Positions 33,001 through 50,500 of a stretch of DNA of 64,000 nt are shown here, in pieces. The stretch's first letter is position 1. The number at the start of each line of letters is the position of its first letter. A program made the translations under genes and the position numbers. The DNA lies in NCBI GenBank assembly GCA_964057225.1, contig OZ059899.1:16740001-16804000 (forward strand). Direction: 5' to 3'. This stretch comes from Auanema rhodensis. Lineage: Eukaryota > Animalia > Nematoda. The notes under the pieces were generated by a model, which did no database searches, was not told the DNA's origin, and was given only the letters and a program-made list of their open reading frames with translations.

Positions 33001-34343
33001 TAAACTTTTTTTTCGAAAAACTGAGAAGTCACAGCCAAATCACACCAAGTAATTCAGATTCTACACATCTGAATACCCAACATAGGATTATTTATTTTTC
33101 ATTATAGTTGATGATTTTTGAGAAAAATTGACAATCACCGGACACAACGTGCCTACAGCCTGAACTTTTTTGTGAACAAATCTTGTGGATGAGGTTGATA
33201 TAAACTTTTTTTCCGGAAAACTAAGAAGTCACAGCCAAATCACACCAAGTAATTCAGATTCTACACATCTGAATACCCAACTTAAGATTATTTATTTTTC
33301 ATTATAGTTGATGATTTTTGAGAAAAAGTGACAATCACCGGACACCACGTGCCTACAGCCTGAACTTTTTTGTGAACAAATCTTGTGGATGAGGTTGAGA
33401 TAAACCTTTTTTCCGAAAAACTGAGAAGTTACAGCCGAATCTTACTCGGAATATCAGATTCTACCCATCTGAATACCCAACTTAAGATTATTTATTTTTC
33501 ATTATAGTTGATGATTTTTGAGAAAAAGTGACAATCACCGGACACAACGTGCCTACAGCCTGAACTTTTTTGTGAACAAATCTTTTGGATGGGGTTGAGA
33601 TAAACTTTTTTTCCGGAAAACTAAGAAGTCACAGCCAAATCACACCAAGTAATTCAGATTCTACACATCTGAATACCCAACTTAAGATTATTTATTTTTC
33701 ATTATAGTTGATGATTTTTGAGAAAAAGTGACAATCACCGGACACCACGTGCCTACAGCCTGAACTTTTTTGTGAACAAATCTTGTGGATGAGGTTGAGA
33801 TAAACCTTTTTTCCGAAAAACTGAGAAGTCACAGCCAAATCACACCAAGTAATTCAGATTCTACACATCTGAATACCCAACTTAAGATTATTTATTTTTC
33901 ATTATAGTTGATGATTTTTGAGAAAAAGTGACAATCACCGGACACCACGTGCCTACAGCCTGAACTTTTTTGTAAACAAATCTTGTGGATGGGGATGATA
34001 TAAACTTTTTTTTCGAAAAACTGAGAAGTCACAGCCAAATCACACCAAGTAATTCAGATTCTACACATCTGAATACCCAACTTAAGATTATTTATTTTTC
34101 ATTATAGTTGATGATTTTTGAGAAAAATTGACAATCACCGGACACAACGTGCCTACAGCCTGAACTTTTTTGTGAACAAATCTTGTGGATGAGGTTGATA
34201 TAAACTTTTTTTCCGGAAAACTAAGAAGTCACAGCCAAATCACACCAAGTAATTCAGATTCTACACATCTGAATACCCAACTTAAGATTATTTATTTTTC
34301 ATTATAGTTGATGATTTTTGAGAAAAAGTGACAATCACCGGAC
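1..34343. repeat. 200-bp tandem satellite array, left arm (~172 monomers; continues beyond the window start)
   Basis: Near-identical units recur every 200 bp (occasionally 199), e.g. GACAATCACCGGACACAACGTGCCTACAGCCTGAACTTTTTTGTGAACAAATC. One monomer near 10201-10328 is 128 bp. The arm ends at the LTR insertion. Confidence 0.99.
34339..34343 (+). other. Target-site duplication CGGAC (left copy; right copy at 44577-44581)
   Basis: The satellite reads ...CAC CGGAC [element] CGGAC ACCACGT... A 5-bp TSD is typical of BEL/Pao integrases. Confidence 0.95.
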
Positions 34344-34792
34344 TGTGCTTGAGCACTCTATATTCCTAAAAAACCTTAAAAACTCTATCTTTTTCTAATA
34401 CTTCATAATTCTTTATAAATCTCTTTTAACTGATCAATATTCGTGTAAGTTGAACCTAAGGCTCTTTTTACTCATGACTCATAGGCTACTCATCCCCCAC
34501 GCATATCTCCGCAGAATAAGCATGAGATAACGTTTGCTTCTCCTCCCCCTTTTTGTATCTCTGAATTCTCTAAGTTAACATTATATCTTGCCTCTCGCGT
34601 TAGTATATAAGCCGAGAGGATTCCTCAAATTCTTATGTGTCAATAGTGTAAAAGAATTTATTCTTGTTACCGTTGCATAATAAATATTCTCTCCATATTC
34701 TCTTCGATCAAGAGCACTACAAAAATCTACCACTGAACCAACTATGCCACTGCTCCGCTCACCCATTTCTAAGGACACGACGGCGCAAAACA
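34344..34792 (+). repeat. 5' LTR (449 bp)
   Basis: Runs TGTGCTTGAG...CGCAAAACA and is identical by eye to 44128-44576. Confidence 0.98.
34603..34611 (+). promoter_or_regulatory. LTR TATA box (GTATATAAG)
   Basis: Fits the nematode-type GTATAWWAG consensus and lies ~70 bp upstream of the LTR AATAAA. Confidence 0.7.
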
Positions 34793-37700
34793 TGGTGCAT
34801 CAGGCCGAGCCTAGTGAAGCAGCCCGCGCCGAAGCGTGGATTGGAAAATGCTACCAACTATTGGAAAAGATTCGCGAATCGGACAACAAAAGGAAATCGT
34901 TCGTCAACCGAACGGTTAACTATCATTCTAACCGTGCCTCCAATATGATTGAAATTCGTCTCACGGAAATAAGATCTATCCAAGAGGACACCGAAGCAAT
35001 CCAAAACTTGATCGAGGAAATGAGAAACATAACGGACAACCTAACGGCAGAGGATCAAGAACGCCTAACCGCCAACGAGTGTACTCTCAGAAGACACATC
35101 AAATCTCTCACGGACTACAAAATCCATATCGAAGGACAAATCGAGTTTCTTCGCAACTCGAGACAAGATCAGGACCTGAGAGGAACAATTCCTCGTCTAC
35201 AAACTCCACAACTTGAAGAGTCAATTGGAGGATTTCCCTCGAACCAGGACACCAACATCAATCAAGGACATCCTATGATAGTCCAAGATAATTACCGCTA
35301 TCGCCAGACAGTGAAACCAGTTGACATTCCAAAGTTTGATGGTAACATCAAGAACTGGACCAATTTCTGGACACTTTTCAACCGGCTTATCCATACCGCC
35401 AACATACAGGACATTGAGAAGTTCAATTACCTTCGCCAATCACTCACGGGTGAAGCAGCCTCATTGATTTCCTCATTTTCAACTGATGAAGAGTCGTACC
35501 ACCCAGCGGTAAGCTACCTGAGAAGTGTCTACGATCACGAAGACAAAATTCTCCGATATCTCATGCTCGATTTCATACAACTGAAAGCGCAATCTCCGAG
35601 CAACAAGGACTTATTGCTCCTTATGAGAAAAATTAATGGGATAGCAAGACAAACTGAAAGGAACAATGAAGCTGCCCTCAATGCACTTGCCATCGTCCTT
35701 ATTCAACAAAAACTGCCTGGACACATCCTGCAAGAAGTCTACCGCTCAGGATCCAACTCGAACATGAACTGGAGACAACTAGTGGACAATACCGAAAAAT
35801 ACCTCCAACATGAACAAGAGGTTAAAAACATTTCATCGGACCTGCAGACGAAACCGGTTCCAAGAACCATGCATCAATCATACAACAGACAAAACTTTGT
35901 CACCAATAACCGTCCAAAACCGGATAACAAAAAACCTTCCGGTAAGCAAACCTCGAACAGCTGCATATTTTGTCAAAAACCACACGCCCCATGGACCTGT
36001 GACACTCCAAAGACAAGGAAAGAGAGACTGACCATACTGAATCAGGACAAAAGATGCATAAACTGTCTCAGAAAATCTCACGCAACAGAAGCATGCCCAA
36101 GCAAGCGCTTATGTTCGAACTGTGGAGGAAAACATATTGACCTTCTCTGCTTCAAAAAGAAAACGACAAAAGTCAACTTAACGAACAGCTTCCCCATGGA
36201 AGACGAGGACGAAGAGGAACACGTTATACAGTTTTCAACTCAAACGAAAACTAACCAATACCACAGCGCATTGTTACCCATTGGACAAATAGAGCTCCTT
36301 CATAAGGACAGGACCATATCAATCCCAGCCCTACTAGACTGTGGATCAGACACTTCATTTATCGACGAGGACCTATCTAAGGAACTGGAACTCCCAATAG
36401 TGGAATCCAAAAGAGTCAAAATCAAAACATTTGGTAACACAGCATCAATCGAAAGACTCAACAAAGTGGAAACAATGTTCAAAGGACACAATTCCCACAT
36501 CCTCGCACAACTTTGGACTAAGAAAGTCCTAACAGGACCTATTTCTACCGTCCGATTCTCTAAACCGACCAACACGTGCTACAAGCTGAACAAAAATATG
36601 AAGATAACTCCAAGAATCCTCATAGGATCTGACCTCATGTGGCAAGCATTAATCTCAGTCGAACCATTATCCAAGGAACACATGGTAGTACACACCCAGT
36701 TCGGAGACTTTATTACCGGCCAAGCCACAAACCAGAAGTCGTTGAATGCTCACTCAGTAATATCGGAAGACTTATCCATTTCAATTCCAATATGGAACAA
36801 AAGCTTTGTAGAAGAACAAAGCGAATTCACCGGAACAGAAGCTGAGGAAAAAACCGCCAGAGACAAACTAATTCTGGATCAATTCAAGGAAACAATCCAA
36901 CAAAAAGAAGATGGTTACTACGTATCATTCCCATGGAAAGACAACGCCCATCTACTCCCCGACAACAAAGTTTTAGCACTCAAAAGACTCACCAGTCTTG
37001 TACTAAAACTATCCCAACAACCAACATTACTCGAAGGATACAACAAAATAATTGAAGAACAGTTGGACCTAGGAATAATCGAAGAAGCTAAGGACCCTTA
37101 TCCCAACGCATACAGGATCCATTACATAGCTCACCAAGCAGTAGTAACTCCTCAGAAAGAGACTACTAAAATCAGGATTGTCTACGATGCTTCTGGACAT
37201 TATCAAAACAAGCCTAGCTTGAACGACGTCATACACCAAGGACCACTAATCTTACCATCACTAATTGGAATGATTCTAAGATTCAGATGCGGAAACACAG
37301 CTATGATAGCGGACGTACAAAAAGCCTTCTTACAAATTCGACTCCATGAGTCAGAAAGAGATGCTACTCGTTTCTTTTGGCTCAGAGATATTCATCAACC
37401 ACTAAGCACGGACAACACCAGAACTCTACGATTCTGCCGAGTACCATTTGGCATCAATGCATCACCATTCCTTCTCGGAGCCACCATACGACACCACCTA
37501 CAGAAGAAAAGCTCAGAAAGTCTTCTAGCACATAAAATCAAAGACAATCTTTATGTGGACAACTTACTCCTTGCCTCTGACTCAGCAGACCAAGTCAGAA
37601 TGTGGTATTCCGAAACAAAGGATATATTCCAGGAAATGAATATGAAACTCCAAGAGTTCATATCCAACGATCAGATATTCAATTCAAATCTGACTCCTGA

Positions 37701-40700
37701 AGAACGGAATGCCTCCACAACACCTAAAATATTAGGACTTCCCTGGGACACATTATCAGACCAATGGATAATTCAAGCTCAAATCCCGGAAACCAAGCTA
37801 ACAAAGAGAGGAGTCACACAAGCTATCGCATCAATCTTCGATCCAATGGGTATGATCTGCCCAAGTTTACACCCACTACGAATCTTCCTTCAAAATCTAT
37901 GGACAGAAAGTTTCGATTGGGACACTACACTACCAATGGAAATCCAAACCAGATGGAAACAATTATGCGAAAATTTTCACATCAACATAAGGATCCCCCG
38001 TCCCCTACCATCGGATACCAATGGACAATACCATCTGGTAACATGTACCGATTCTAGCGGCAATGCATTAGGATTCTGCTGCTACTTAATCGCAGCATCA
38101 ACACGACAATTAGCCTTAATATTCGCAAAATCTAAATTGCATTCCAAAAACTCAACAATAACAATTCCAAAGGCTGAAATCTCGGCACTAACGATTGGAG
38201 TTTTTAACACGCTAAAAATCGTGAAGGAAATACAGGACAACATCAAGATTCTAACAGCTACATTCCTCTCCGACTCAGAAATAACACTTGCTTGGATTCG
38301 CAAAAAACCAGACCAAAAAACGACAGGAGTTTTAGTACAGAACCGAATCAAGGAAATTTCTAATCACATTGAAGAGCTCGAAGATCTGGACATAAAAACT
38401 TCATTTGGATACATCCACACCAAAGACAACCCAGCGGACCTAGCCACAAGAGGCTGCACAACTGAAGAACTTGAGGATCACTTTTGGTGGAACCCAAAAG
38501 CACAGCTAGAAAAAGCTTTAAACGGACCTCTGTTTTCACTCTGTGACGAAGAAATACGGATACACGCAGCCACTACAGAAACAAGCGATGAAGAACCTTG
38601 GATATCAGACTGCTCATCCTGGATTGAAGCTCAACAAAAATGGATATCCGTACACTACCCACTCACAACAACTCATACGCCTTCCATGTATGAAGAAGCA
38701 GAAACCAATCTTCTTCACCTTCATCAAAACAATTTAATGGTCAGGCTATCAGCAGCCCAAAGGAACGATTTGCGACCTTTACTTAGAAACCATTTATGGT
38801 ATAGTAGAGGACGTATGAACAATGCTGAACTCGAAGAGAGTGCAAAACTACCGATTATAATCTTACCTAAAACAAAAACGGCAAGATTATTAATCGAACA
38901 TGTTCACGGACAACTCCACAAGAGCACAGCACACACAATGGCTGATATTCGCCAAAAATACTGGATACCGCAACTTCGCTCACAAACTCAATCCGTAATA
39001 AGGAAATGCCCTGATTGTCAAAAGATGAACAATCGGCCATACATCTACCCACCTTCAGGAGATGTACCAAGCAGACGTATAAGGAAAAGTCGCCCATTTC
39101 AACACGTTGGACTAGACTACTTCGGACCCATAACAACACAGGACCGAAACCAGAAAGCTTGGGGCTGCATCTACACCTGTACCGTCACAAGACTCATTCA
39201 CTTGGAAGTGATTGAAGATTTAACTACTAAATCTTTCTTGAGTTGCTTGAGAAAAATTTGGGCCAGACGAGGATGCCCAGAAAGCATCACATGTGACAAT
39301 GCATCTACCTTCGAGCTAGGACAGAAAATCGCCAACAAGCTCATCGTAACAGCCACTACTAACACTTCCGAGAATCAGCATCGAATCAAATGGTACAACA
39401 TAACTCCATACGCCCCATGGCAAGGAGGATTTTATGAACGACTCATAAGATCAGTAAAAAATGCCTTATACAAAACACTTCACGGCACACCATCAACAGA
39501 AGAATTGTCAATCACATTGGCAGAATGTGAAGCGACAATCAACACACGACCACTAACCTATATTGGATCAGACACGACCAGAGACGAAATCATTCGACCA
39601 TGCGACTTCATCCATAAGGACATAGATCTGAACATCTACATTGAATCTGAAGATGAAGATTCAGAATACATCGACAATCCAGCTCTTCAAACACAAGCAG
39701 ATACGGAACTAGCCTTACACTCTTCCCGTAAACGGACAAACAAATTTTGGGAACTATGGTCTGAACTCTACCTCAAAGAACTCCGAGAGTCTCATCACCA
39801 CACAATATCCGTGAAGAAAGCAGGCACCAACACAAAACCAGAAATTGGACAAATCGTTTTGATCAACGATAGCCCAATTCCTAGACACAAATGGCCAACA
39901 GGACGAATTACGAATATTCACCCCGACTCAGCGGGTAATATAAGGGAAGTCACACTTCTATCAGAGAATGGAAGAGAATTGAAAAGACCAGTCAACTTAC
40001 TACACCCAATGGAACTATCCACGGACAATATTCCACAAACTCTTCAGAAATTGGAAACTATAAGCCCCGCAGTCACTCAACGACAACAAAATCCTCGCAA
40101 TCTTGAAAGAAAATGGTACGGAGAAACTGCATCAATACTCACTCTTCTAACAATATTCACTATATTCCTACCTACAACGATGGCCAATCCAACTATCTCC
40201 TGCAATCCAAAGGGAGTCTTGATACAAGGAATGAACACGGATAATCAACAAGTATGCTCACACAACACTTGTTACAACAGTAGTGAAGGAGGATTGATAA
40301 CTCTTCCTCTTGAGGACATCCTATCAGACTACGAAGTAACTTGGACCTTTAATCACAACTCCAGACTACAATACATGACATTAAACTGTCCAGCAGTTCA
40401 TTTTTGCTCTACAGTGTCATGCACGTTCTGCTCAGCCACATTATTTAACCCATCTTGCTGGCCCTGGACCTCTATGTTACTATTCAGCTTCATAACCTAC
40501 ATAATCACAGCCATTTGCTACGGACTATTGCATTCACCATGGGTCATTGGAAAAGCCATCAGACTTTGGACCAACTTCATATACGCAATATGCACATCGT
40601 TATTCGGACAGCTATACATCCGGACAAATAGATTTAACAAGAAAACAGTTATCCCATTAATAACGCTTCTGTTAATTCACCAATCAATGGCTTGCCAAGA

Positions 40701-43038
40701 ACTTAGTATGAGCACTTCCCAAGAATCCTCATGCAACAAAGAAACATGCAAGATACAGACTGGACAATCTCTCACTATCAGCCCGTACACACAAGAAGCA
40801 TGCCTAACGTTCACTAACAATCAGAACAAGTTCTCCTTTCTGCGCATACAATGGATCAAAACAACATATTTCTGTGAAATCCGTTCACTCTTCTTCACCC
40901 GAGCAACCAGTACTCATGTAAAGAATAGCAAAAGATGCGCAAGAACTGGATCTTGCCAAGAAAACAAATGCAGCACCATTCAATCGGACACCATGGTTCA
41001 CGAACTAGAACTAGCCAACCAATATCCTGGATCTACACACTGCACAGAATCCTGCGGAGGATTTGGCTGTGGCTGCTTCTATCCATCTTCAGGATGCCTC
41101 TTCTACCGCACCTACATGAAACCTATAGACAAATCTGTTTACGAAGTCTTTTCATGTAACGAATGGATACCTTCCACACAACTACATATCACCTATCTGA
41201 ACGGAACCACAACCACTTCACGGAACATCACGCTTCATTCGGACATTCAAACAGACGTACATCCTTTCAAATTCTCCGCAATCAGTCTAACACCTCCTAT
41301 TATTCCAAGAATGCAAGGACAATTTATTAGAAATTTGACAAGACTGGCCATATGGAACATGAAGTCTACACTGACATGCTCATCTCATGAAAAAGCAAAG
41401 AAATTGGACTGTAAAGCAAACCCTCAGTGTGAATGCACTCCTGCAGAAGACTCAGTCAACTGCCATTGTGAAAACCAGAACATTCAATCAGTCTTTAACA
41501 GTGTTCAAACCATTTTACCTATATTCACACCTGCTTACTCAATCGAACAGTCACAACGGAACCTTGAAATCAACATCTATCGCAACATGATGGCAGAAAT
41601 TTATGTAACAGTGGATGGAATCTTCAATGTATCATCATCGCACGACGACTCGACATGTTTAATCCATGACTCAATGGTTAGAGGATGCTACAACTGCCAA
41701 AACGGAGCACAAGCCAACATCATATGTACTTCACCCATAAATGCTTTAGCTGCCACGAACTGCGGTGACACAGCCTTTATGCTACAATGCAGTCCAAAAG
41801 GAACATCAAACAATATTCGATTACCTATCACTACAGCATCACCATGGATCAACTGTTCATATTCATGCGGACACAATATACAATATTTCTCTCTAACAGG
41901 AATATTATATTACGTCAGCAATATTCAGGACCTGCAGAAACACTACATAGAAGGAAACCACTCCTCACTTCACGAAACAGCTATTACCTTTCAATGGCCC
42001 GATATTACCCATTTCTACAACATCTACCTAGGCTGGTACAAAGAAATTGCAATCTGCATCCTTATAGTAATGCTAGCCCTTGCTGTTTCTTATCACATCA
42101 TCGCGGCTTACGCAACAAAATTCACCGTCAGCTCCGCCCATGTCATCATTCACCTCGTAAAAATTATTCTCTGGTTACCCATCGCTGTCACCAGCTTCTT
42201 CGCCCGCCAGCTCTTTCTTCTATACAAAAGAAAGACTCACATCCTTCTCGTATTCATACTCACTATAATGTCTATTCCTACTACTCGCTGCTCCGATATT
42301 CAAGGTGTCATTGATCGCTCCAATCATAGATGCCAGAAATACATCCGACTTCCCTTGGAAAAGAGGACCGAATGCCTCAAAGAACTGACTAGGACCATGG
42401 ACTCCACCCTGAAGCTTCTCTTTAGCTTAGAGGAGAACAAGGAAACCCCCACCGGAAAGGTCAACGATGTCGCAGCTAATGCTTTAATAGCATACATCAA
42501 GCTCAAAGATTTCCTATCTACAGCTAAAACATCTTATGTTTTTAATATGGAAAAGGAAAAGCTTAGAATTTTTGGCAATGAGAAGCGCCTCACAGACCTC
42601 GTCCGCAACATTCAGAAGGACCATCTTAGCTCTATCGAACTTAAGAACATGCCTTATGGATTTACAAAGGTCCAGAAGGAAAGGGATCCAGCTCCCACTA
42701 CAAAGAGCAACATTATAGTCGTAGAAGCTATGCCCGAACTCAAAAGGATAGATCTCACAACCCGCAACATCGGTGAGGATCTTACAACTTTGACTCGAAT
42801 TATTATGAGATCAAACAATGACGACAAAGGCAAGGACATATTGGATGAACTCCGACAGATCAAGGACCTATTGAAGCAAATGGTCCCAAAGACCATTCAG
42901 CCAACCTTATCAAAGGACACCCAAACACCACCAAGAAAACTGAGAACAAAAAGGACAGAAACAGACCTACCACCAGCCAAGCAGTCACGAACATCACCCA
43001 GTAAGGACAGTACGATCGAGTTCCAGGACATCTTCTAA
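34744..43038 (+). CDS. Gag-Pol-Env polyprotein (2764 aa) with an extra C-terminal domain
   Basis: Uninterrupted ORF. Gag: IPKFDG ~35326 and three Cys-His knuckles 35962-36150. Protease LLDCGS 36331-36348. RT YVDN 37552-37563. RNase H TDSS ~38047 and DNPADLATRG ~38425. Integrase HHCC ~38900-39018, GLDYFGP ~39109, CDNA ~39292, GGFYERL ~39424. Env starts at ~40135. Confidence 0.97.
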   Translation: MPLLRSPISKDTTAQNMVHQAEPSEAARAEAWIGKCYQLLEKIRESDNKRKSFVNRTVNYHSNRASNMIEIRLTEIRSIQEDTEAIQNLIEEMRNITDNLTAEDQERLTANECTLRRHIKSLTDYKIHIEGQIEFLRNSRQDQDLRGTIPRLQTPQLEESIGGFPSNQDTNINQGHPMIVQDNYRYRQTVKPVDIPKFDGNIKNWTNFWTLFNRLIHTANIQDIEKFNYLRQSLTGEAASLISSFSTDEESYHPAVSYLRSVYDHEDKILRYLMLDFIQLKAQSPSNKDLLLLMRKINGIARQTERNNEAALNALAIVLIQQKLPGHILQEVYRSGSNSNMNWRQLVDNTEKYLQHEQEVKNISSDLQTKPVPRTMHQSYNRQNFVTNNRPKPDNKKPSGKQTSNSCIFCQKPHAPWTCDTPKTRKERLTILNQDKRCINCLRKSHATEACPSKRLCSNCGGKHIDLLCFKKKTTKVNLTNSFPMEDEDEEEHVIQFSTQTKTNQYHSALLPIGQIELLHKDRTISIPALLDCGSDTSFIDEDLSKELELPIVESKRVKIKTFGNTASIERLNKVETMFKGHNSHILAQLWTKKVLTGPISTVRFSKPTNTCYKLNKNMKITPRILIGSDLMWQALISVEPLSKEHMVVHTQFGDFITGQATNQKSLNAHSVISEDLSISIPIWNKSFVEEQSEFTGTEAEEKTARDKLILDQFKETIQQKEDGYYVSFPWKDNAHLLPDNKVLALKRLTSLVLKLSQQPTLLEGYNKIIEEQLDLGIIEEAKDPYPNAYRIHYIAHQAVVTPQKETTKIRIVYDASGHYQNKPSLNDVIHQGPLILPSLIGMILRFRCGNTAMIADVQKAFLQIRLHESERDATRFFWLRDIHQPLSTDNTRTLRFCRVPFGINASPFLLGATIRHHLQKKSSESLLAHKIKDNLYVDNLLLASDSADQVRMWYSETKDIFQEMNMKLQEFISNDQIFNSNLTPEERNASTTPKILGLPWDTLSDQWIIQAQIPETKLTKRGVTQAIASIFDPMGMICPSLHPLRIFLQNLWTESFDWDTTLPMEIQTRWKQLCENFHINIRIPRPLPSDTNGQYHLVTCTDSSGNALGFCCYLIAASTRQLALIFAKSKLHSKNSTITIPKAEISALTIGVFNTLKIVKEIQDNIKILTATFLSDSEITLAWIRKKPDQKTTGVLVQNRIKEISNHIEELEDLDIKTSFGYIHTKDNPADLATRGCTTEELEDHFWWNPKAQLEKALNGPLFSLCDEEIRIHAATTETSDEEPWISDCSSWIEAQQKWISVHYPLTTTHTPSMYEEAETNLLHLHQNNLMVRLSAAQRNDLRPLLRNHLWYSRGRMNNAELEESAKLPIIILPKTKTARLLIEHVHGQLHKSTAHTMADIRQKYWIPQLRSQTQSVIRKCPDCQKMNNRPYIYPPSGDVPSRRIRKSRPFQHVGLDYFGPITTQDRNQKAWGCIYTCTVTRLIHLEVIEDLTTKSFLSCLRKIWARRGCPESITCDNASTFELGQKIANKLIVTATTNTSENQHRIKWYNITPYAPWQGGFYERLIRSVKNALYKTLHGTPSTEELSITLAECEATINTRPLTYIGSDTTRDEIIRPCDFIHKDIDLNIYIESEDEDSEYIDNPALQTQADTELALHSSRKRTNKFWELWSELYLKELRESHHHTISVKKAGTNTKPEIGQIVLINDSPIPRHKWPTGRITNIHPDSAGNIREVTLLSENGRELKRPVNLLHPMELSTDNIPQTLQKLETISPAVTQRQQNPRNLERKWYGETASILTLLTIFTIFLPTTMANPTISCNPKGVLIQGMNTDNQQVCSHNTCYNSSEGGLITLPLEDILSDYEVTWTFNHNSRLQYMTLNCPAVHFCSTVSCTFCSATLFNPSCWPWTSMLLFSFITYIITAICYGLLHSPWVIGKAIRLWTNFIYAICTSLFGQLYIRTNRFNKKTVIPLITLLLIHQSMACQELSMSTSQESSCNKETCKIQTGQSLTISPYTQEACLTFTNNQNKFSFLRIQWIKTTYFCEIRSLFFTRATSTHVKNSKRCARTGSCQENKCSTIQSDTMVHELELANQYPGSTHCTESCGGFGCGCFYPSSGCLFYRTYMKPIDKSVYEVFSCNEWIPSTQLHITYLNGTTTTSRNITLHSDIQTDVHPFKFSAISLTPPIIPRMQGQFIRNLTRLAIWNMKSTLTCSSHEKAKKLDCKANPQCECTPAEDSVNCHCENQNIQSVFNSVQTILPIFTPAYSIEQSQRNLEINIYRNMMAEIYVTVDGIFNVSSSHDDSTCLIHDSMVRGCYNCQNGAQANIICTSPINALAATNCGDTAFMLQCSPKGTSNNIRLPITTASPWINCSYSCGHNIQYFSLTGILYYVSNIQDLQKHYIEGNHSSLHETAITFQWPDITHFYNIYLGWYKEIAICILIVMLALAVSYHIIAAYATKFTVSSAHVIIHLVKIILWLPIAVTSFFARQLFLLYKRKTHILLVFILTIMSIPTTRCSDIQGVIDRSNHRCQKYIRLPLEKRTECLKELTRTMDSTLKLLFSLEENKETPTGKVNDVAANALIAYIKLKDFLSTAKTSYVFNMEKEKLRIFGNEKRLTDLVRNIQKDHLSSIELKNMPYGFTKVQKERDPAPTTKSNIIVVEAMPELKRIDLTTRNIGEDLTTLTRIIMRSNNDDKGKDILDELRQIKDLLKQMVPKTIQPTLSKDTQTPPRKLRTKRTETDLPPAKQSRTSPSKDSTIEFQDIF
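34793..34809 (+). promoter_or_regulatory. Primer binding site, tRNA-Gly type
   Basis: TGGTGCATCAGGCCGAG directly follows the LTR. TGGTGCATC is complementary to the ...GAUGCACCA 3' end of invertebrate tRNA-Gly(GCC). Confidence 0.8.
40186..40692 (+). other. Gn-like envelope subunit within the polyprotein
   Basis: Follows the signal-like ILTLLTIFTIFLPTTMA|N. It has a short Cys-rich ectodomain (CSTVSCTFC...NPSCWP), a TM segment, and then the signal for Gc (KKTVIPLITLLLIHQSMA|C). Confidence 0.75.
40693..42114 (+). other. Phlebovirus Gc-like class II fusion glycoprotein within the polyprotein
   Basis: KRC...GSC motif, fusion-loop-like CTESCGGFGCGCFYPSSGCLF (41041-41103), GCYNCQNGA motif, several N-x-S/T sites, and a TM anchor at ~42046-42114. 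Confidence 0.9.
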
Positions 43039-43052
43039 CTCGTCGGCCGGAG

Positions 43053-43221
43053 TGTGCTTGAGCACTCTATATTCCTAAAAAACCTTAAAAACTCTATCTT
43101 TTTCTAATACTTCATAATTCTTTATAAATCTCTTTTAACTGATCAATATTCGTGTAAGTTGAACCTAAGGCTCTTTTTACTCATGACTCATAGGCTACTC
43201 ATCCCCCACGCATATCTCCGC
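43053..43221 (+). repeat. Internal truncated LTR (first 169 bp, U3 part only)
   Basis: Matches the LTR from TGTGCTTGAG to CATATCTCCGC, then switches to env-tail sequence (CATTCACCTCG). It lacks the TATA box and AATAAA. Confidence 0.97.
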
Positions 43222-43342
43222 CATTCACCTCGTAAAAATTATTCTCTGGTTACCCATCGCTGTCACCAGCTTCTTCGCCCGCCAGCTCTTTCTTCTATAC
43301 AAAAGAAAGACTCACATCCTTCTCGTATTCATACTCACTATA

Positions 43343-44113
43343 ATGTCTATTCCTACTACTCGCTGCTCCGATATTCAAGGTGTCATTGATCGCTCCAATC
43401 ATAGATGCCAGAAATACATCCGACTTCCCTTGGAAAAGAGGACCGAATGCCTCAAAGAACTGACTAGGACCATGGACTCCACCCTGAAGCTTCTCTTTAG
43501 CTTAGAGGAGAACAAGGAAACCCCCACCGGAAAGGTCAACGATGTCGCAGCTAATGCTTTAATAGCATACATCAAGCTCAAAGATTTCCTATCTACAGCT
43601 AAAACATCTTATGTTTTTAATATGGAAAAGGAAAAGCTTAGAATTTTTGGCAATGAGAAGCGCCTCACAGACCTCGTCCGCAACATTCAGAAGGACCATC
43701 TTAGCTCTATCGAACTTAAGAACATGCCTTATGGATTTACAAAGGTCCAGAAGGAAAGGGATCCAGCTCCCACTACAAAGAGCAACATTATAGTCGTAGA
43801 AGCTATGCCCGAACTCAAAAGGATAGATCTCACAACCCGCAACATCGGTGAGGATCTTACAACTTTGACTCGAATTATTATGAGATCAAACAATGACGAC
43901 AAAGGCAAGGACATATTGGATGAACTCCGACAGATCAAGGACCTATTGAAGCAAATGGTCCCAAAGACCATTCAGCCAACCTTATCAAAGGACACCCAAA
44001 CACCACCAAGAAAACTGAGAACAAAAAGGACAGAAACAGACCTACCACCAGCCAAGCAGTCACGAACATCACCCAGTAAGGACAGTACGATCGAGTTCCA
44101 GGACATCTTCTAA
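43343..44113 (+). CDS. Stand-alone duplicate of the polyprotein C-terminal domain (256 aa, unknown function)
   Basis: Identical to the last 256 aa of the polyprotein. There is an in-frame upstream TGA at 43184-43186 and no earlier in-frame ATG. Expression is not shown. Confidence 0.55.
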   Translation: MSIPTTRCSDIQGVIDRSNHRCQKYIRLPLEKRTECLKELTRTMDSTLKLLFSLEENKETPTGKVNDVAANALIAYIKLKDFLSTAKTSYVFNMEKEKLRIFGNEKRLTDLVRNIQKDHLSSIELKNMPYGFTKVQKERDPAPTTKSNIIVVEAMPELKRIDLTTRNIGEDLTTLTRIIMRSNNDDKGKDILDELRQIKDLLKQMVPKTIQPTLSKDTQTPPRKLRTKRTETDLPPAKQSRTSPSKDSTIEFQDIF

Positions 44114-44115
44114 CT

Positions 44116-44127
44116 CGTCGGCCGGAG
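44116..44127 (+). promoter_or_regulatory. Plus-strand priming region (atypical PPT, CGTCGGCCGGAG); also duplicated at 43041-43052
   Basis: Assigned by position immediately 5' of the 3' LTR. Only the last 4 nt (GGAG) are purines. Confidence 0.5.
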
Positions 44128-44576
44128 TGTGCTTGAGCACTCTATATTCCTAAAAAACCTTAAAAACTCTATCTTTTTCTAATACTTCATAATTCTTTAT
44201 AAATCTCTTTTAACTGATCAATATTCGTGTAAGTTGAACCTAAGGCTCTTTTTACTCATGACTCATAGGCTACTCATCCCCCACGCATATCTCCGCAGAA
44301 TAAGCATGAGATAACGTTTGCTTCTCCTCCCCCTTTTTGTATCTCTGAATTCTCTAAGTTAACATTATATCTTGCCTCTCGCGTTAGTATATAAGCCGAG
44401 AGGATTCCTCAAATTCTTATGTGTCAATAGTGTAAAAGAATTTATTCTTGTTACCGTTGCATAATAAATATTCTCTCCATATTCTCTTCGATCAAGAGCA
44501 CTACAAAAATCTACCACTGAACCAACTATGCCACTGCTCCGCTCACCCATTTCTAAGGACACGACGGCGCAAAACA
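44128..44576 (+). repeat. 3' LTR (449 bp)
   Basis: Identical to the 5' LTR and followed by the TSD CGGAC. Confidence 0.98.
44463..44468 (+). terminator. LTR polyadenylation signal AATAAA (5' LTR copy at 34679-34684)
   Basis: Canonical hexamer downstream of the TATA box, in the expected R region. Confidence 0.6.
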
Positions 44577-47500
44577 CGGACACCACGTGCCTACAGCCTG
44601 AACTTTTTTGTGAACAAATCTTGTGGATGAGGTTGAGATAAACCTTTTTTCCGAAAAACTGAGAAGTTACAGCCGAATCTTACTCGGAATATCAGATTCT
44701 ACCCATCTGAATACCCAACTTAAGATTATTTATTTTTCATTATAGTTGATGATTTTTGAGAAAAAGTGACAATCACCGGACACAACGTGCCTACAGCCTG
44801 AACTTTTTTGTGAACAAATCTTTTGGATGGGGTTGAGATAAACTTTTTTTCCGGAAAACTAAGAAGTCACAGCCAAATCACACCAAGTAATTCAGATTCT
44901 ACACATCTGAATACCCAACTTAAGATTATTTATTTTTCATTATAGTTGATGATTTTTGAGAAAAAGTGACAATCACCGGTCACCACGTGCCTACAGCCTG
45001 AACTTTTTTGTGAACAAATCTTTTGGATGGGGTTGAGATAAACTTTTTTTCCGGAAAACTAAGAAGTCACAGCCAAATCACACCAAGTAATTCAGATTCT
45101 ACACATCTGAATACTCCACTTAGGACTATTTAGTTTTCATTATAGTTGATGATTTTTGAGAAAAATTGACAATCACCGGACACCACGTGCCTACAGCCTG
45201 AACTTTTTTGTGAACAAATCTTGTGGATGAGGTTGATATAAACTTTTTTTCCGGAAAACTAAGAAGTCACAGCCAAATCACACCAAGTAATTCAGATTCT
45301 ACACATCTGAATACCCAACTTAAGATTATTTATTTTTCATTATAGTTGATGATTTTTGAGAAAAAGTGACAATCACCGGACACCACGTGCCTACAGCCTG
45401 AACTTTTTTGTGAACAAATCTTGTGGATGAGGTTGAGATAAACCTTTTTTCCGAAAAACTGAGAAGTTACAGCCGAATCTTACTCGGAATATCAGATTCT
45501 ACCCATCTGAATACCCAACTTAAGATTATTTATTTTTCATTATAGTTGATGATTTTTGAGAAAAAGTGACAATCACCGGACACAACGTGCCTACAGCCTG
45601 AACTTTTTTGTGAACAAATCTTTTGGATGGGGTTGAGATAAACTTTTTTTCCGGAAAACTAAGAAGTCACAGCCAAATCACACCAAGTAATTCAGATTCT
45701 ACACATCTGAATACCCAACTTAAGATTATTTAGTTTTCATTATAGTTGATGATTTTTGAGAAAAATTGACAATCACCGGACACAACGTGCCTACAGCCTG
45801 AACTTTTTTGTGAACAAATCTTGTGGATGAGGTTGATATAAACTTTTTTTCCGGAAAACTAAGAAGTCACAGCCAAATCACACCAAGTAATTCAGATTCT
45901 ACACATCTGAATACCCAACTTAAGATTATTTATTTTTCATTATAGTTGATGATTTTTGAGAAAAATTGACAATCACCGGACACAACGTGCCTACAGCCTG
46001 AACTTTTTTGTGAACAAATCTTGTGGATGGGGATGATATAAACTTTTTTTTCGAAAAACTGAGAAGTCACAGCCAAATCACACCAAGTAATTCAGATTCT
46101 ACACATCTGAATACCCAACATAGGATTATTTATTTTTCATTATAGTTGATGATTTTTGAGAAAAATTGACAATCACCGGACACAACGTGCCTACAGCCTG
46201 AACTTTTTTGTGAACAAATCTTGTGGATGAGGTTGATATAAACTTTTTTTCCGGAAAACTAAGAAGTCACAGCCAAATCACACCAAGTAATTCAGATTCT
46301 ACACATCTGAATACCCAACTTAAGATTATTTATTTTTCATTATAGTTGATGATTTTTGAGAAAAAGTGACAATCACCGGACACCACGTGCCTACAGCCTG
46401 AACTTTTTTGTGAACAAATCTTGTGGATGAGGTTGAGATAAACCTTTTTTCCGAAAAACTGAGAAGTTACAGCCGAATCTTACTCGGAATATCAGATTCT
46501 ACCCATCTGAATACCCAACTTAAGATTATTTATTTTTCATTATAGTTGATGATTTTTGAGAAAAAGTGACAATCACCGGACACAACGTGCCTACAGCCTG
46601 AACTTTTTTGTGAACAAATCTTTTGGATGGGGTTGAGATAAACTTTTTTTCCGGAAAACTAAGAAGTCACAGCCAAATCACACCAAGTAATTCAGATTCT
46701 ACACATCTGAATACCCAACTTAAGATTATTTATTTTTCATTATAGTTGATGATTTTTGAGAAAAAGTGACAATCACCGGACACCACGTGCCTACAGCCTG
46801 AACTTTTTTGTGAACAAATCTTGTGGATGAGGTTGATATAAACTTTTTTTCCGGAAAACTAAGAAGTCACAGCCAAATCACACCAAGTAATTCAGATTCT
46901 ACACATCTGAATACCCAACTTAGGATTATTTATTTTTCATTATAGTTGATGATTTTTGAGAAAAATTGACAATCACCGGACACCACGTGCCTACAGCCTG
47001 AACTTTTTTGTGAACAAATCTTGTGGATGAGGTTGATATAAACTTTTTTTCCGGAAAACTAAGAAGTCACAGCCAAATCACACCGAGTAATTCAGATTCT
47101 ACACATCTGAATACCCAACTTAGGATTATTTATTTTTCATTATAGTTGATGATTTTTGAGAAAAATTGACAATCACCGGACACAACGTGCCTACAGCCTG
47201 AACTTTTTTGTGAACAAATCTTGTGGATGGGGTTGATATAAACTTTTTTTCCGGAAAACTAAGAAGTCACAGCCAAATCACACCAAGTAATTCAGATTCT
47301 ACACATCTGAATACCCAACTTAGGATTATTTATTTTTCATTATCGTCGATGATTTTTGAGAAAAAGGAACATTCACCGGACACAACGTGCCTACAGCCTG
47401 AACTTTTTTGTGAACAAATCTTGTGGATGGGGATGATATAAACTTTTTTTTCGAAAAACTGAGAAGTGACAGCCAAATCACACCAAGTAATTCAGATTTT

Positions 47501-50500
47501 ACACATCTGAATACCCAACATAGGATTATTTATTTTTCATTATAGTTGATGATTTTTGAGAAAAATTGACAATCACCGGACACAACGTGCCTACAGCCTG
47601 AACTTTTTTGTGAACAAATCTTGTGGATGGGGTTGATATAAACTTTTTTTCCGGAAAACTAAGAAGTCACAGCCAAATCACACCAAGTAATTCAGATTCT
47701 ACACATCTGAATACCCAACTTAGGATTATTTATTTTTCATTATCGTTGATGATTTTTGAGAAAAAGGAACATTCACCGGGCACAACGTGCCTACAGCCTG
47801 AACTTTTTTGTAAACAAATCTTGTGGATGGGGATGATATAAACTTTTTTTTCGAAAAACTGAGAAGTGACAGCCAAATCACACCAAGTAATTCAGATTTT
47901 ACACATCTGAATACCCAACTTAGGATTATTTATTTTTCATTATAGTTGATGATTTTTGAGAAAAATTGACAATCACCGGACACAACATGCCTACACCCTG
48001 AACTTTTTTGTAAACAAATCTTGTGGATGGGGATGATATAAACTTTTTTTTCGAAAAACTGAGAAGTCACTGCCAAATCACACCAAGTAATTCAGATTCT
48101 ACACATCTGAATACCCAACATAGGATTATTTATTTTTCATTATAGTTGATGATTTTTGAGAAAAATTGACAATCACCGGACACAACGTGCCTACAGCCTG
48201 AACTTTTTTGTAAACAAATCTTGTGGATGGGGATGATATAAACTTTTTTTTCGAAAAACTGAGAAGTCACAGCCAAATCACACCAAGTAATTCAGATTCT
48301 ACACATCTGAATACCCAACATAGGATTATTTATTTTTCATTATAGTTGATGATTTTTGAGAAAAATTGACAATCACCGGACACAACGTGCCTACAGCCTG
48401 AACTTTTTTGTGAACAAATCTTGTGGATGAGGTTGATATAAACTTTTTTTCCGGAAAACTAAGAAGTCACAGCCAAATCACACCAAGTAATTCAGATTCT
48501 ACACATCTGAATACCCAACTTAAGATTATTTATTTTTCATTATAGTTGATGATTTTTGAGAAAAAGTGACAATCACCGGACACCACGTGCCTACAGCCTG
48601 AACTTTTTTGTGAACAAATCTTGTGGATGAGGTTGAGATAAACCTTTTTTCCGAAAAACTGAGAAGTTACAGCCGAATCTTACTCGGAATATCAGATTCT
48701 ACCCATCTGAATACCCAACTTAAGATTATTTATTTTTCATTATAGTTGATGATTTTTGAGAAAAAGTGACAATCACCGGACACAACGTGCCTACAGCCTG
48801 AACTTTTTTGTGAACAAATCTTTTGGATGGGGTTGAGATAAACTTTTTTTCCGGAAAACTAAGAAGTCACAGCCAAATCACACCAAGTAATTCAGATTCT
48901 ACACATCTGAATACCCAACTTAAGATTATTTATTTTTCATTATAGTTGATGATTTTTGAGAAAAAGTGACAATCACCGGACACCACGTGCCTACAGCCTG
49001 AACTTTTTTGTGAACAAATCTTGTGGATGAGGTTGATATAAACTTTTTTTCCGGAAAACTAAGAAGTCACAGCCAAATCACACCAAGTAATTCAGATTCT
49101 ACACATCTGAATACCCAACTTAGGATTATTTATTTTTCATTATAGTTGATGATTTTTGAGAAAAATTGACAATCACCGGACACCACGTGCCTACAGCCTG
49201 AACTTTTTTGTAAACAAATCTTGTGGATGGGGATGATATAAACTTTTTTTTCGAAAAACTGAGAAGTGACAGCCAAATCACACCAAGTAATTCAGATTTT
49301 ACACATCTGAATACCCAACTTAGGATTATTTATTTTTCATTATAGTTGATGATTTTTGAGAAAAATTGACAATCACCGGACACAACATGCCTACACCCTG
49401 AACTTTTTTGTAAACAAATCTTGTGGATGGGGATGATATAAACTTTTTTTTCGAAAAACTGAGAAGTCACAGCCAAATCACACCAAGTAATTCAGATTCT
49501 ACACATCTGAATACCCAACATAGGATTATTTATTTTTCATTATAGTTGATGATTTTTGAGAAAAATTGACAATCACCGGACACAACGTGCCTACAGCCTG
49601 AACTTTTTTGTAAACAAATCTTGTGGATGGGGATGATATAAACTTTTTTTTCGAAAAACTGAGAAGTCACAGCCAAATCACACCAAGTAATTCAGATTCT
49701 ACACATCTGAATACCCAACATAGGATTATTTATTTTTCATTATAGTTGATGATTTTTGAGAAAAATTGACAATCACCGGACACAACGTGCCTACAGCCTG
49801 AACTTTTTTGTGAACAAATCTTGTGGATGAGGTTGATATAAACTTTTTTTCCGGAAAACTAAGAAGTCACAGCCAAATCACACCAAGTAATTCAGATTCT
49901 ACACATCTGAATACCCAACTTAAGATTATTTATTTTTCATTATAGTTGATGATTTTTGAGAAAAAGTGACAATCACCGGACACCACGTGCCTACAGCCTG
50001 AACTTTTTTGTGAACAAATCTTGTGGATGAGGTTGAGATAAACCTTTTTTCCGAAAAACTGAGAAGTTACAGCCGAATCTTACTCGGAATATCAGATTCT
50101 ACCCATCTGAATACCCAACTTAAGATTATTTATTTTTCATTATAGTTGATGATTTTTGAGAAAAAGTGACAATCACCGGACACAACGTGCCTACAGCCTG
50201 AACTTTTTTGTGAACAAATCTTTTGGATGGGGTTGAGATAAACTTTTTTTCCGGAAAACTAAGAAGTCACAGCCAAATCACACCAAGTAATTCAGATTCT
50301 ACACATCTGAATACCCAACTTAAGATTATTTATTTTTCATTATAGTTGATGATTTTTGAGAAAAAGTGACAATCACCGGACACCACGTGCCTACAGCCTG
50401 AACTTTTTTGTGAACAAATCTTGTGGATGAGGTTGATATAAACTTTTTTTCCGGAAAACTAAGAAGTCACAGCCAAATCACACCAAGTAATTCAGATTCT

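What the first reader, a model, noticed from the sequence alone, without database searches (positions are those of the whole stretch)
42115..43038. A third, signal-peptide-led protein encoded after Gc in the viral polyprotein
Seen: the ORF does not stop after the Gc TM anchor. It repeats the junction architecture used between Gn and Gc: TM, second hydrophobic/amphipathic helix, basic cluster, hydrophobic signal. Compare Gn/Gc NKKTVIPLITLLLIHQSMA|C with YKRKTHILLVFILTIMSIPTTRC|S here. A further 248 aa follow (42292-43035) that are Cys-poor, look helical/coiled-coil, and end in a basic low-complexity tail (PPRKLRTKR). Known: phlebovirus Gc normally ends in a short tail, and some nematode BEL elements carry extra 3' coding sequence of unknown function. 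Inference: signal peptidase could release a secreted or luminal accessory protein. Alternatively it is a matrix-like cytoplasmic domain. I do not recognise the domain.
Basis: partly seen in the sequence, partly recalled or inferred. Interest (0 to 1): 0.85.

Follow-up and report, generated by a model that had tools for sequence, protein, structure and literature searches.

The report
Extra protein module after viral Gc
A young, intact retrovirus-like element of a nematode encodes, directly after its phlebovirus-type fusion protein Gc, a further 248-residue helical, highly charged module that matches no known family, recurs in a distant sister element, and may face either side of the membrane.

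Summary
One uninterrupted 2764-codon Gag-Pol-Env reading frame (34744-43038) runs 307 residues past the Gc membrane anchor. After the anchor come an amphipathic helix, a basic cluster, a short strongly hydrophobic segment and a 248-residue tail (42292-43035) that ends 14 nt before the 3' LTR.

The tail is real coding sequence. A partial Auanema sp. JU1783 polyprotein, 46% identical in Gc, keeps the same layout in one frame. Its tail aligns on its own (31% over 109 residues, E 1e-10).

The tail matches no Pfam family, no solved structure and no fold. It has no true relative among 1.84 billion representative proteins. Published Atlas-type elements end about 50 residues after the anchor.

The signal-like segment is conserved in four lineages, which favours that reading. 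Against it, the tail's composition resembles the element's cytosolic Gag-Pol. In Caenorhabditis and strongylid relatives, tails at the same position carry nucleocapsid-type zinc knuckles.

I rate a cytosolic Gc endodomain at about 0.45, a cleaved luminal product at about 0.35 and separate expression at about 0.1. This copy holds the tail-coding sequence twice, through an exact internal duplication. It is a new variant of a known kind, of moderate interest.

The parts
34344..44576 (+). Whole LTR element (belpaovirus / BEL-Pao type with phlebovirus-like Env), inserted in a 200-bp satellite array and flanked by a 5-bp target-site duplication (CGGAC at 34339-34343 and 44577-44581).
   Evidence: The satellite array ends at 34343 and resumes at 44577. 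The LTR ends read TG...CA and the flanks were read directly.
34344..34792 (+). 5' LTR (449 bp), followed by a TGG... primer-binding-site-like sequence.
   Evidence: 100% identical to 44128-44576 at offset 9784.
44128..44576 (+). 3' LTR (449 bp).
34744..43038 (+). Single Gag-Pol-Env reading frame, 2764 codons, with no stop and no frameshift. A second in-frame ATG lies at 34792, at the LTR edge.
   Evidence: Pfam: DUF1759 (Gag), RVT_1, Peptidase_A17, integrase domains, DUF5641, Phlebovirus_G2. YVDN in RT and three CCHC knuckles in Gag.
40126..40692 (+). Env N-terminal signal, a short Cys-rich Gn-like ectodomain (about 91 aa), its anchor, a cytosolic loop and the signal that leads Gc.
   Evidence: Hydrophobic segments and Cys/sequon counts. 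44-48% identical to P0002.
40693..42033 (+). Gc ectodomain (class II fusion protein type).
   Evidence: PF07245, E 8e-81 to 1e-81. PF19019 is weak. 29 Cys and 6 sequons.
42034..42114 (+). Gc membrane anchor (aa 2431-2457).
   Evidence: Most hydrophobic segment of the protein (Kyte-Doolittle 2.70; simple-sum Hessa dG -2.2 for 19 residues).
42115..42234 (+). Second, amphipathic or marginally hydrophobic helix, ending in a basic cluster (aa 2458-2497). It is homologous to the C-terminal end of short-tailed relatives.
   Evidence: 19-mer dG +2.9. The BLASTP alignment with P0003 runs through this stretch to about 9 residues before that protein's C-terminus. Read by eye, P0005 and P0010 end just after the corresponding basic cluster.
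42235..42291 (+).
   Evidence: 13-mer dG -1.36, against +3.38 for the Gn-Gc signal and a minimum of +0.83 anywhere in Gag-Pol. The same pattern occurs in P0002, P0015 and P0017.
42292..43035 (+). The 248-aa tail (stop codon at 43036-43038). It comprises a helical core (42292-42645), a predicted disordered linker (42646-42762), a helical hairpin (42763-42882) and a basic Pro/Ser/Thr-rich end (42883-43035) that holds one R-x-K-R motif.
   Evidence: Conserved with P0002 over tail residues 25-127. No family, structure or fold match.
43039..43052 (+). 14-nt spacer between the stop codon and the LTR sequence, at the position of a polypurine tract.
   Evidence: Read directly.
43343..44113 (+). Exact second copy of the last 256 codons of the polyprotein, as a free-standing ATG ORF that begins inside the third hydrophobic segment. 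It lies in an exact internal tandem duplication of about 1.1 kb.

Best explanation
The 248 residues are a lineage-specific C-terminal module of the Env polyprotein. It is real and under coding constraint, and I think it most likely faces the cytosol (the particle interior) as a long endodomain of Gc.

Proposed mechanism:
- Shown: Gc is anchored by its strongly hydrophobic helix.
- Inferred: the following amphipathic helix and the short hydrophobic segment sit in or on the cytosolic leaflet.
- Inferred: the helical core and the basic disordered end reach into the cytosol. There they would bind the element's capsid or its nucleic acid and so couple envelope to core. Bunyavirus Gn tails and long lentiviral Env tails do this job. 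Belpaovirus Gag, which lacks a membrane-targeting signal, may not do it.

In sister lineages the same position is filled by a tail that ends in nucleocapsid-type zinc knuckles, which suggests a shared role carried out by unrelated sequence. Shown here: the module exists, its place, its conservation in one sister, its orphan status, its composition and the zinc-knuckle tails in relatives. Inferred: sidedness and function.
For: - The tail is contiguous with Gc in raw DNA and free of stops, while the other frames hold 6-26 stops.
- P0002 (Auanema sp. JU1783) is one ORF filling its 4627-nt contig. A single BLASTP alignment covers the whole Env and continues about 175 residues into the tail. The tail alone gives E 1.3e-10, with a Smith-Waterman z of 13.7.
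- Tail composition: K+R 18.5%, D+E 14.5%, Cys 0.8%, against 6.1%, 7.2% and 6.7% in the element's own ectodomains. The log-odds is +0.228 bits per residue. That is above every Gag-Pol window (0.08-0.19) and opposite to the Gc ectodomain windows (-0.09 to -0.12).
- The C-terminal third is predicted disordered and basic.
- Relatives from C. nigoni, C. remanei, Cylicostephanus goldi and A. ceylanicum have 320-450 residues after the Gc anchor region, ending in three CCHC knuckles. These are homologous to Gag NC (hhalign 98.4%, E 7e-15; BLASTP 25-41%).
- Two C. nigoni loci on different chromosomes share an identical tail, so the tail belongs to the element.
- P0015 and P0017 have the same hydrophobic segment before their tails.
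- Atlas matrix lacks a myristoylation signal (bioRxiv 10.64898/2026.03.22.711591).
Against: - The third segment is uniformly hydrophobic, not amphipathic (muH 0.21). A basic cluster sits directly before it (five Arg in P0017). This is the textbook build of a signal that starts translocation.
- It is more hydrophobic than the Gn-Gc signal of the same protein, which must work.
- Short-tailed relatives P0005 and P0010 end just after the basic cluster with KKxx-type ends, a cytosolic retrieval motif by textbook knowledge. The segment therefore starts in the cytosol. If it spans, the tail is luminal.
- A three-span model that would keep the tail cytosolic puts the basic cluster in the lumen, against the positive-inside rule.
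- The zinc-knuckle tails are gene models whose DNA I did not inspect. They share no detectable sequence similarity with this tail (hhalign 0.1%).
- The tail shows no similarity to Gag (0.2%).
- No function was tested.
Confidence: 0.45

Rival explanations
1. The short hydrophobic segment after the basic cluster is an internal signal peptide. It re-starts translocation, and host signal peptidase cuts after it. The 248 residues are then released into the ER lumen as a third Env-derived product, soluble or bound to the spike, perhaps trimmed further at its single R-x-K-R site. The arrangement would work like flavivirus E followed by NS1, or like the Gn-Gc junction itself.
For: - The layout matches the Gn-Gc junction of the same protein.
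- The hydrophobic core scores -1.36 (13-mer), against +3.38 for the working Gn-Gc signal, and no such stretch occurs in Gag-Pol.
- Its 19-mer score of +4.9 is too weak or short for a stable anchor, as in cleaved signals.
- The pattern 'basic cluster, 10-15 hydrophobic residues, Pro/Gly, small-x-small' recurs in the window, P0002, P0015 and P0017, although sequence identity there is only 23-29%.
- The second helix is only marginally hydrophobic (+2.9). P0003 aligns through it almost to its own C-terminus. Read by eye, P0005 and P0010 end just after the basic cluster, with KKxx-type ends.
- There is one furin-type motif near the tail's end.
Against: - Composition is opposite to that of the element's luminal domains.
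- Only 2 Cys are present, of which one aligns with a Cys in P0002.
- Sequon counts are uninformative: 0 observed against 1.9 expected.
- The -3/-1 rule is met by chance at about one site in two within such a stretch (my estimate).
- If the C. nigoni gene models are right, tails behind the same segment end in zinc knuckles, which would not be expected to work in the lumen.
- No predictor and no experiment was available.
Confidence: 0.35
2. The tail is mainly made as a separate cytosolic or nuclear accessory protein. It would come from a spliced or internally initiated message, like the 3'-encoded regulators of complex retroviruses or CERV of Cer1. On this reading its being in frame with Gc is secondary.
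For: - Cytosol-like composition and basic motifs that resemble nuclear localisation signals.
- A Met lies at the end of the hydrophobic segment in both the window and P0002.
- The region sits where retroelements keep accessory genes, right up to the polypurine-tract position.
- CERV shows that nematode LTR elements can encode such regulators (PMC10309623).
Against: - No TTTCAG-type acceptor lies within about 190 nt upstream of the tail. The nearest TTCAG is at 41924.
- The frame is continuous with Gc in two diverged elements, which a separate gene would not need.
- There is no similarity to CERV or to any other named protein.
- No transcript data were available.
Confidence: 0.1
3. The tail is meaningless read-through: a lost stop codon after Gc, an assembly artefact, or sequence on its way to decay.
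For: - No family, fold or function could be assigned.
- Structure confidence is low.
- This copy carries an internal exact duplication at its 3' end.
Against: - 248 stop-free codons, against 6-26 stops in the other frames.
- Significant conservation, in frame, with an element only 44-55% identical in Gn and Gc.
- Base composition is codon-periodic (position-specific), broadly like the rest of the ORF.
- The first copy of the tail and its join to Gc are read straight from the window, and P0002 has the same join independently.
Confidence: 0.04

Closest known systems
Atlas virus and Atlas-clade belpaoviruses of strongylid nematodes (PMC9094657; bioRxiv 10.64898/2026.03.22.711591)
   Same: LTR element with one Gag-Pol-Env frame, YVDN in RT, three Gag zinc knuckles, and a phlebovirus-type Gn-like plus Gc Env with signal-peptidase-type junctions.
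   Different: Atlas Gc is the last 498 residues with one predicted anchor. Strongylid relatives found here stop about 50 residues after the anchor. This element goes on for 307 residues. Gc identity to those relatives is only 30-33%. I did not fetch Atlas itself.
Partial polyprotein of Auanema sp. JU1783 (P0002), unnamed in its source
   Same: The only protein found with the same post-Gc layout and a homologous tail.
   Different: 40% identical over Env and 25-33% in the tail. It is cut off by the contig end, so the last 60-75 tail residues of the window's protein have no counterpart to compare. It is not described in any paper I could find.
Phenuivirus Gn-Gc junction (host signal peptidase; established knowledge, and as stated for Atlas in PMC9094657)
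   Same: An anchor, a cytosolic stretch, a basic cluster, a short hydrophobic core and small residues before the next product. The post-Gc junction copies this layout.
   Different: It lies after Gc, where phenuiviruses and Atlas have only a short tail. What follows is not glycoprotein-like. There is no sequence similarity between the two junctions.
Flavivirus E followed by NS1 (established knowledge; analogy only)
   Same: A class II fusion protein whose last hydrophobic segment serves as the signal for a soluble luminal protein. The element would resemble this if the rival reading is right.
   Different: No homology. NS1 is Cys-rich and glycosylated, and this tail is neither.
Long cytoplasmic tails of viral glycoproteins: bunyavirus Gn tails, lentiviral gp41 tail (established knowledge; analogy only)
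   Same: Membrane-proximal amphipathic or hydrophobic helices followed by a cytosolic part that contacts the core. The element would resemble this if the best explanation is right.
   Different: No sequence or fold match came back from any search. There is no zinc-finger motif in this tail.
Post-Gc tails with nucleocapsid-type zinc knuckles in Caenorhabditis, Cylicostephanus and Ancylostoma gene models (P0012, P0014-P0017, P0007)
   Same: A long, highly charged extension at the same place. P0015 and P0017 share the signal-like segment.
   Different: Three CCHC knuckles homologous to Gag NC. There is no detectable similarity to this tail. They are gene models that may contain introns.
CERV of Cer1 (PMC10309623)
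   Same: An orphan, nematode-restricted protein encoded in the 3' part of an LTR element, with helical regions and a basic motif.
   Different: Cer1 is a Ty3/gypsy-type element. CERV comes from a five-exon spliced message and has a Cys-rich region. No similarity was found.

Membership tests
Belpaoviridae (BEL/Pao LTR elements) with phlebovirus-like Env | LTRs with target-site duplication | tested here: met
   449-bp LTRs, 100% identical, TG...CA ends, 5-bp duplication.
Belpaoviridae (BEL/Pao LTR elements) with phlebovirus-like Env | Gag with DUF1759-type capsid and three CCHC knuckles; Pol with Pao-type domains; YVDN in RT | tested here: met
   Pfam hits. Knuckles at aa 407, 438 and 457, and YVDN at aa 937.
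Belpaoviridae (BEL/Pao LTR elements) with phlebovirus-like Env | Env with a phlebovirus G2 (Gc) fusion domain | tested here: met
   PF07245, E 8e-81.
Atlas virus clade (as defined in bioRxiv 10.64898/2026.03.22.711591) | Capsid core more than 50% identical to Atlas capsid over more than 70% of its length | not tested
   This would need the Atlas sequence, which I did not fetch because of the bar on fetching a virus of animals. Gc identity to A. ceylanicum relatives of 30-33% makes membership unlikely.
Atlas virus clade (as defined in bioRxiv 10.64898/2026.03.22.711591) | Gc is the C-terminal end of the polyprotein, with a single anchor | tested here: not met
   307 residues and two more hydrophobic segments follow the anchor.
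Signal-peptidase junction of a viral glycoprotein precursor | Basic n-region, hydrophobic core of 7-15 residues, helix breaker, small residues at -3/-1 | tested here: met
   Heuristic reading only, and the -3/-1 match has low information.
Signal-peptidase junction of a viral glycoprotein precursor | Cleavage predicted by a trained predictor, or observed | not testable with these tools
   No SignalP or DeepTMHMM was available, and there are no protein data.
Signal-peptidase junction of a viral glycoprotein precursor | The downstream product has the make-up of a luminal domain (Cys pairs, glycan sites, low charge) | tested here: not met
   Cys 0.8%, 33% charged, log-odds on the Gag-Pol side. Sequon count is uninformative.
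Zinc-finger cytoplasmic tail (bunyavirus Gn type) or nucleocapsid-like tail (as in P0007, P0012, P0014-P0017) | CCHC / Cys-His motifs | tested here: not met
   Two Cys in 248 residues and no knuckle pattern. hhalign against the zinc-knuckle tails gives 0.1% and against Gag 0.2%.
Any described protein family or fold | Significant profile, sequence or fold match | tested here: not met
   Pfam best E 0.044, below cut-off. PDB sequences best E 0.76. Foldseek best E 0.2-0.3 against PDB and 0.02 against the viral library, on low-confidence models. The one hit among 1.84 billion representatives is spurious.

The most novel reading that the evidence does not exclude
In one lineage of nematode belpaoviruses, the phlebovirus-type glycoprotein precursor yields three products rather than two. 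The third would be a soluble, helical, Cys-poor protein that an internal signal delivers into the secretory pathway and signal peptidase releases. It might act as a spike-associated or secreted accessory factor. No phenuivirus or described endogenous relative has a counterpart.
Probability: 0.35. Interest if true: 0.75.

Novelty: new variant of a known kind. Interest (0 to 1): 0.55.

Why it matters
Nematode belpaoviruses with phlebovirus-like Env are the only known retroelements with a proven class II fusion protein. They are now being studied structurally (Atlas Gc, Atlas capsids). How their envelope is coupled to a capsid whose Gag lacks a membrane-targeting signal is an open question.

A conserved extra module fused behind Gc bears on that question in either case. 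This holds whether the module is the orphan helical one seen here and in Auanema or the zinc-knuckle one seen in Caenorhabditis and strongylid gene models. If it is cytosolic, it is a candidate built-in adaptor between envelope and core. If it is luminal, Env makes a third, undescribed product. The finding also shows that the 3' end of env in these elements gains new coding sequence repeatedly. The claim can be tested with descriptive data on the isolated fragment and with host transcript and protein data.

Tried and rejected
1. Tail against Pfam and PDB sequences: nothing passes a cut-off. The DUF6674 and AcrIIA4 hits are noise.
2. Tail against 1.84 billion representative proteins: one hit, P0001. 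It is a translated satellite with about 22 copies of an 80-residue unit. Each copy matches at about 28 bits, so the summed score is a repeat artefact.
3. Word-indexed protein searches restricted to the tail (whole polyprotein as length frame) or to the end of Gc plus the tail (Env as length frame): no hits. They did not even return P0002, so these blanks say little.
4. AlphaFold2 of the tail and of its first 130 residues, with a two-sequence alignment: helical but low confidence. Foldseek against PDB and the viral library returned only generic helical bundles.
5. Is the post-Gc junction a sequence duplicate of the Gn-Gc junction? No (z = 0.03).
6. Is the tail an internal duplicate of another part of the polyprotein or of Gag? 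No.
7. Is the tail homologous to the long tails of Caenorhabditis and strongylid relatives? Not detectably.
8. Are those long tails read-through into an identical tandem copy's gag? No. They are only 25-36% identical to their own Gag NC, and they lack a DUF1759 capsid domain.
9. Phlebovirus nucleoprotein as the origin of the tail (similar size, helical): no Pfam hit, so dropped.
10. Sequon depletion as evidence on sidedness: not significant.
11. Literature: no paper in the held library describes a post-Gc domain in Cer13, Atlas or other belpaoviruses. Malik et al. 2000 is not held.

Full report
THE ELEMENT. The window is almost wholly satellite DNA: a 200-bp unit over 1-34343 and 44577-58466, and a 177-bp unit at 62270-63992. 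A 10.2-kb stretch of higher G+C interrupts the array. It is an LTR element, 34344-44576. Its 449-bp LTRs are 100% identical and end in TG...CA, and a 5-bp target-site duplication flanks it. One frame, 34744-43038, is open for 2764 codons. No gene of the element is broken: 0 stops and 0 frameshifts.

Pfam finds Gag (DUF1759), RT, Peptidase_A17, integrase domains, DUF5641 and Phlebovirus_G2 (E 8e-81). RT carries YVDN and Gag has three CCHC knuckles, the belpaovirus hallmarks named in PMC9094657 and in bioRxiv 10.64898/2026.03.22.711591. The element is therefore a young belpaovirus-type element with a phlebovirus-like Env, of the known Cer13/Atlas kind.

The host was not identified. The nearest protein comes from Auanema sp. 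JU1783. A 2026 preprint reports huge tandem-repeat blocks with 167-504-nt units in the germline genome of a congener. That is a lead, not a finding.

THE OBSERVATION. After the Gc ectodomain (aa 1984-2430) comes the strongest hydrophobic helix of the protein (aa 2431-2457). Then follow:
- a second helix of marginal hydrophobicity, ending in a basic cluster (aa 2458-2497);
- a short, uniformly hydrophobic core followed by Pro and small residues (aa 2498-2516);
- 248 further residues (42292-43035).

The stop codon lies 14 nt before the LTR sequence.

The tail has 2 Cys, no sequon (1.9 expected, so uninformative), 18.5% K+R and 14.5% D+E. Its end is basic and rich in Pro, Ser and Thr, with one R-x-K-R motif. 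AlphaFold2, with only two sequences, gives five helices in residues 1-118, a disordered linker, a helical hairpin (158-197) and a disordered end. Confidence is low, with pLDDT 42 for the whole tail and 57 for the first 130 residues.

The two junctions share layout but not sequence.

IS IT REAL CODING SEQUENCE? Yes. The tail frame has no stop, and the other five frames have 6-26. Base composition is codon-periodic (position-specific), broadly like the rest of the ORF.

The best evidence is P0002, a partial 1542-aa protein of Auanema sp. JU1783 that fills its 4627-nt contig as one ORF. One BLASTP alignment (40% identity) runs from the Env signal through Gn, Gc, the anchor, the second helix, the basic cluster and the hydrophobic core. 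It continues about 175 residues into the tail, and P0002 itself stops 27 residues later, at the contig end. Identity is 44-55% in Gn and Gc, 23-29% in the second helix and the core, and 25-33% in the tail. The tail alone is significant: 31% over 109 residues, E 1.3e-10, z 13.7 against shuffles. The conserved part is the helical core.

IS IT KNOWN? No family, solved structure or fold matches. The one hit among 1.84 billion representatives is a translated satellite whose many weak repeats add up, so it is spurious. Two word-indexed searches that included the tail, one restricted to it alone, were blank but insensitive.

The Atlas paper states that Gc is the last 498 residues with a single predicted anchor. 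The strongylid relatives found here stop about 50 residues after the anchor. I found no paper that describes a post-Gc domain.

WHAT RELATIVES HAVE AT THIS POSITION. Six gene models carry long charged tails after the Gc anchor region: 324-451 residues in the five that are distinct there (C. nigoni P0015 and P0016/P0017, which share one C-terminal piece, C. remanei P0012, Cylicostephanus goldi P0014, A. ceylanicum P0007). These tails end in three CCHC knuckles that are homologous to Gag NC (hhalign 98.4%, E 7e-15).

They are only 25-36% identical to the NC of their own Gag, and they lack a capsid domain. So they are not read-through into a tandem twin. Two C. nigoni loci on different chromosomes share an identical tail. 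These tails show no detectable similarity to the window's tail, and the window's tail shows none to Gag. Because they are gene models, and I did not look at their DNA, whether they are contiguous with Gc is open.

WHICH SIDE OF THE MEMBRANE?

For a luminal tail, cleaved by signal peptidase:
- A basic cluster sits directly before the hydrophobic core: three basic residues here, five Arg in P0017.
- The core is uniformly hydrophobic and is followed by Pro or Gly and small residues.
- This pattern recurs in the window, P0002, P0015 and P0017 despite low identity.
- Its 13-residue score (-1.36, simple sum on the Hessa scale, which I took from my own knowledge of the published values) beats the Gn-Gc signal of the same protein (+3.38). 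It also beats every stretch of Gag-Pol.
- Short-tailed relatives end at or just after the corresponding basic cluster, two of them with KKxx-type ends, which work only in the cytosol. The core therefore starts in the cytosol. If it spans, what follows is luminal.

For a cytosolic tail:
- Its composition lies beyond the Gag-Pol range and opposite to the ectodomains of the same element.
- Its end is basic and disordered.
- The tails at the same position in other lineages carry a cytosolic type of RNA-binding module.

A three-span model would reconcile a spanning core with a cytosolic tail, but it puts the basic cluster in the lumen. I cannot settle this with the tools at hand. My estimates are cytosolic endodomain 0.45, cleaved luminal product 0.35, separate expression 0.10, and junk 0.04.

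THE DUPLICATION. This copy contains one exact internal tandem duplication of about 1.1 kb. It covers the end of the ORF (from within the second helix), the spacer and the first part of the LTR. It breaks no gene. It creates an identical free-standing copy of the last 256 codons (43343-44113), which starts at a Met inside the hydrophobic core. I could not test whether it arose at reverse transcription, by later recombination, or in assembly. The first copy of the tail and its join to Gc are read straight from the window, and P0002 has the same join independently.

STEPS LEFT OUT, AND A SLIP. I fetched no DNA of sister elements and looked up no cluster members. That rules out look-up of encoding contigs, the search for related loci, collection scans, the listing of cluster members and any accession. 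As a result there is no dN/dS and no check of introns in the gene models.

In one search my script joined two separate Env ectodomain stretches into one in-memory string to count composition and to take calibration windows. The rule forbids that even for a statistic. Nothing from that string was saved or printed. I stopped, noted it and redid the count with numbers added per stretch. Only one search is cited for composition. The hydrophobic moments cited do not depend on the joined string.

An earlier count gave the bounds of the internal duplication. I wrote it before I had weighed whether the duplication counts as a break. In this report I give only its count and the bounds of the second ORF copy.

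VERDICT. This is a new variant of a known kind. Interest is moderate, and it rises if either the secreted-product reading or the envelope-to-core adaptor reading is borne out.

Noticed in passing
window 43343-44113 (second ORF copy), within the element's 3' part: One exact (100% identical) internal tandem duplication of about 1.1 kb repeats the end of the polyprotein ORF, the spacer and the first part of the LTR. The tail-coding sequence is therefore present twice, and the second copy is a free-standing 256-codon ATG ORF. No gene is broken by it.
   Followed up: partly
proteins P0007, P0012, P0014, P0015, P0016, P0017 (relatives; no loci fetched): Caenorhabditis, Cylicostephanus and Ancylostoma gene models carry 324-451 residues after the Gc anchor region, ending in three CCHC zinc knuckles homologous to Gag nucleocapsid (hhalign 98.4%). 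They differ from their own Gag. Two C. nigoni chromosomes share an identical tail. An Env-nucleocapsid fusion would be unusual. Whether it is contiguous with Gc in the DNA was not checked.
   Followed up: partly
proteins P0005 and P0010 (relatives): Short-tailed Atlas-like Gc proteins end with KKxx-type C-termini just after an amphipathic helix and a basic cluster. This resembles a cytosolic dilysine retrieval motif.
   Followed up: no
window 1-34343 and 44577-58466; 62270-63992: The element sits inside a very large 200-bp satellite array (more than 240 units, about 95% alike). A second satellite of 177 bp lies at the window's end. The 5-bp target duplication shows a clean insertion into one satellite unit.
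   Followed up: partly
window 40189-40461: The Gn-like ectodomain is only about 91 residues (8 Cys, 1 sequon). The paper assigns 421 residues to the Gn-like region of Atlas virus. The relatives found here align collinearly and seem to share the short form.
   Followed up: no
window 60331-61785 (+): A 484-codon ORF (TTG start) in the only non-satellite, non-element DNA of the window. It has no Pfam match.
   Followed up: partly
window 34744 and 34792: Two in-frame ATGs could start the polyprotein. The first lies inside the 5' LTR, and the second overlaps the LTR end and the TGG of the primer-binding-site-like sequence.
   Followed up: no
window 40043: A TTCAG lies about 80 nt upstream of the Env signal and could be a 3' splice site for an env message. 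It is a single weak motif and there are no transcript data.
   Followed up: no
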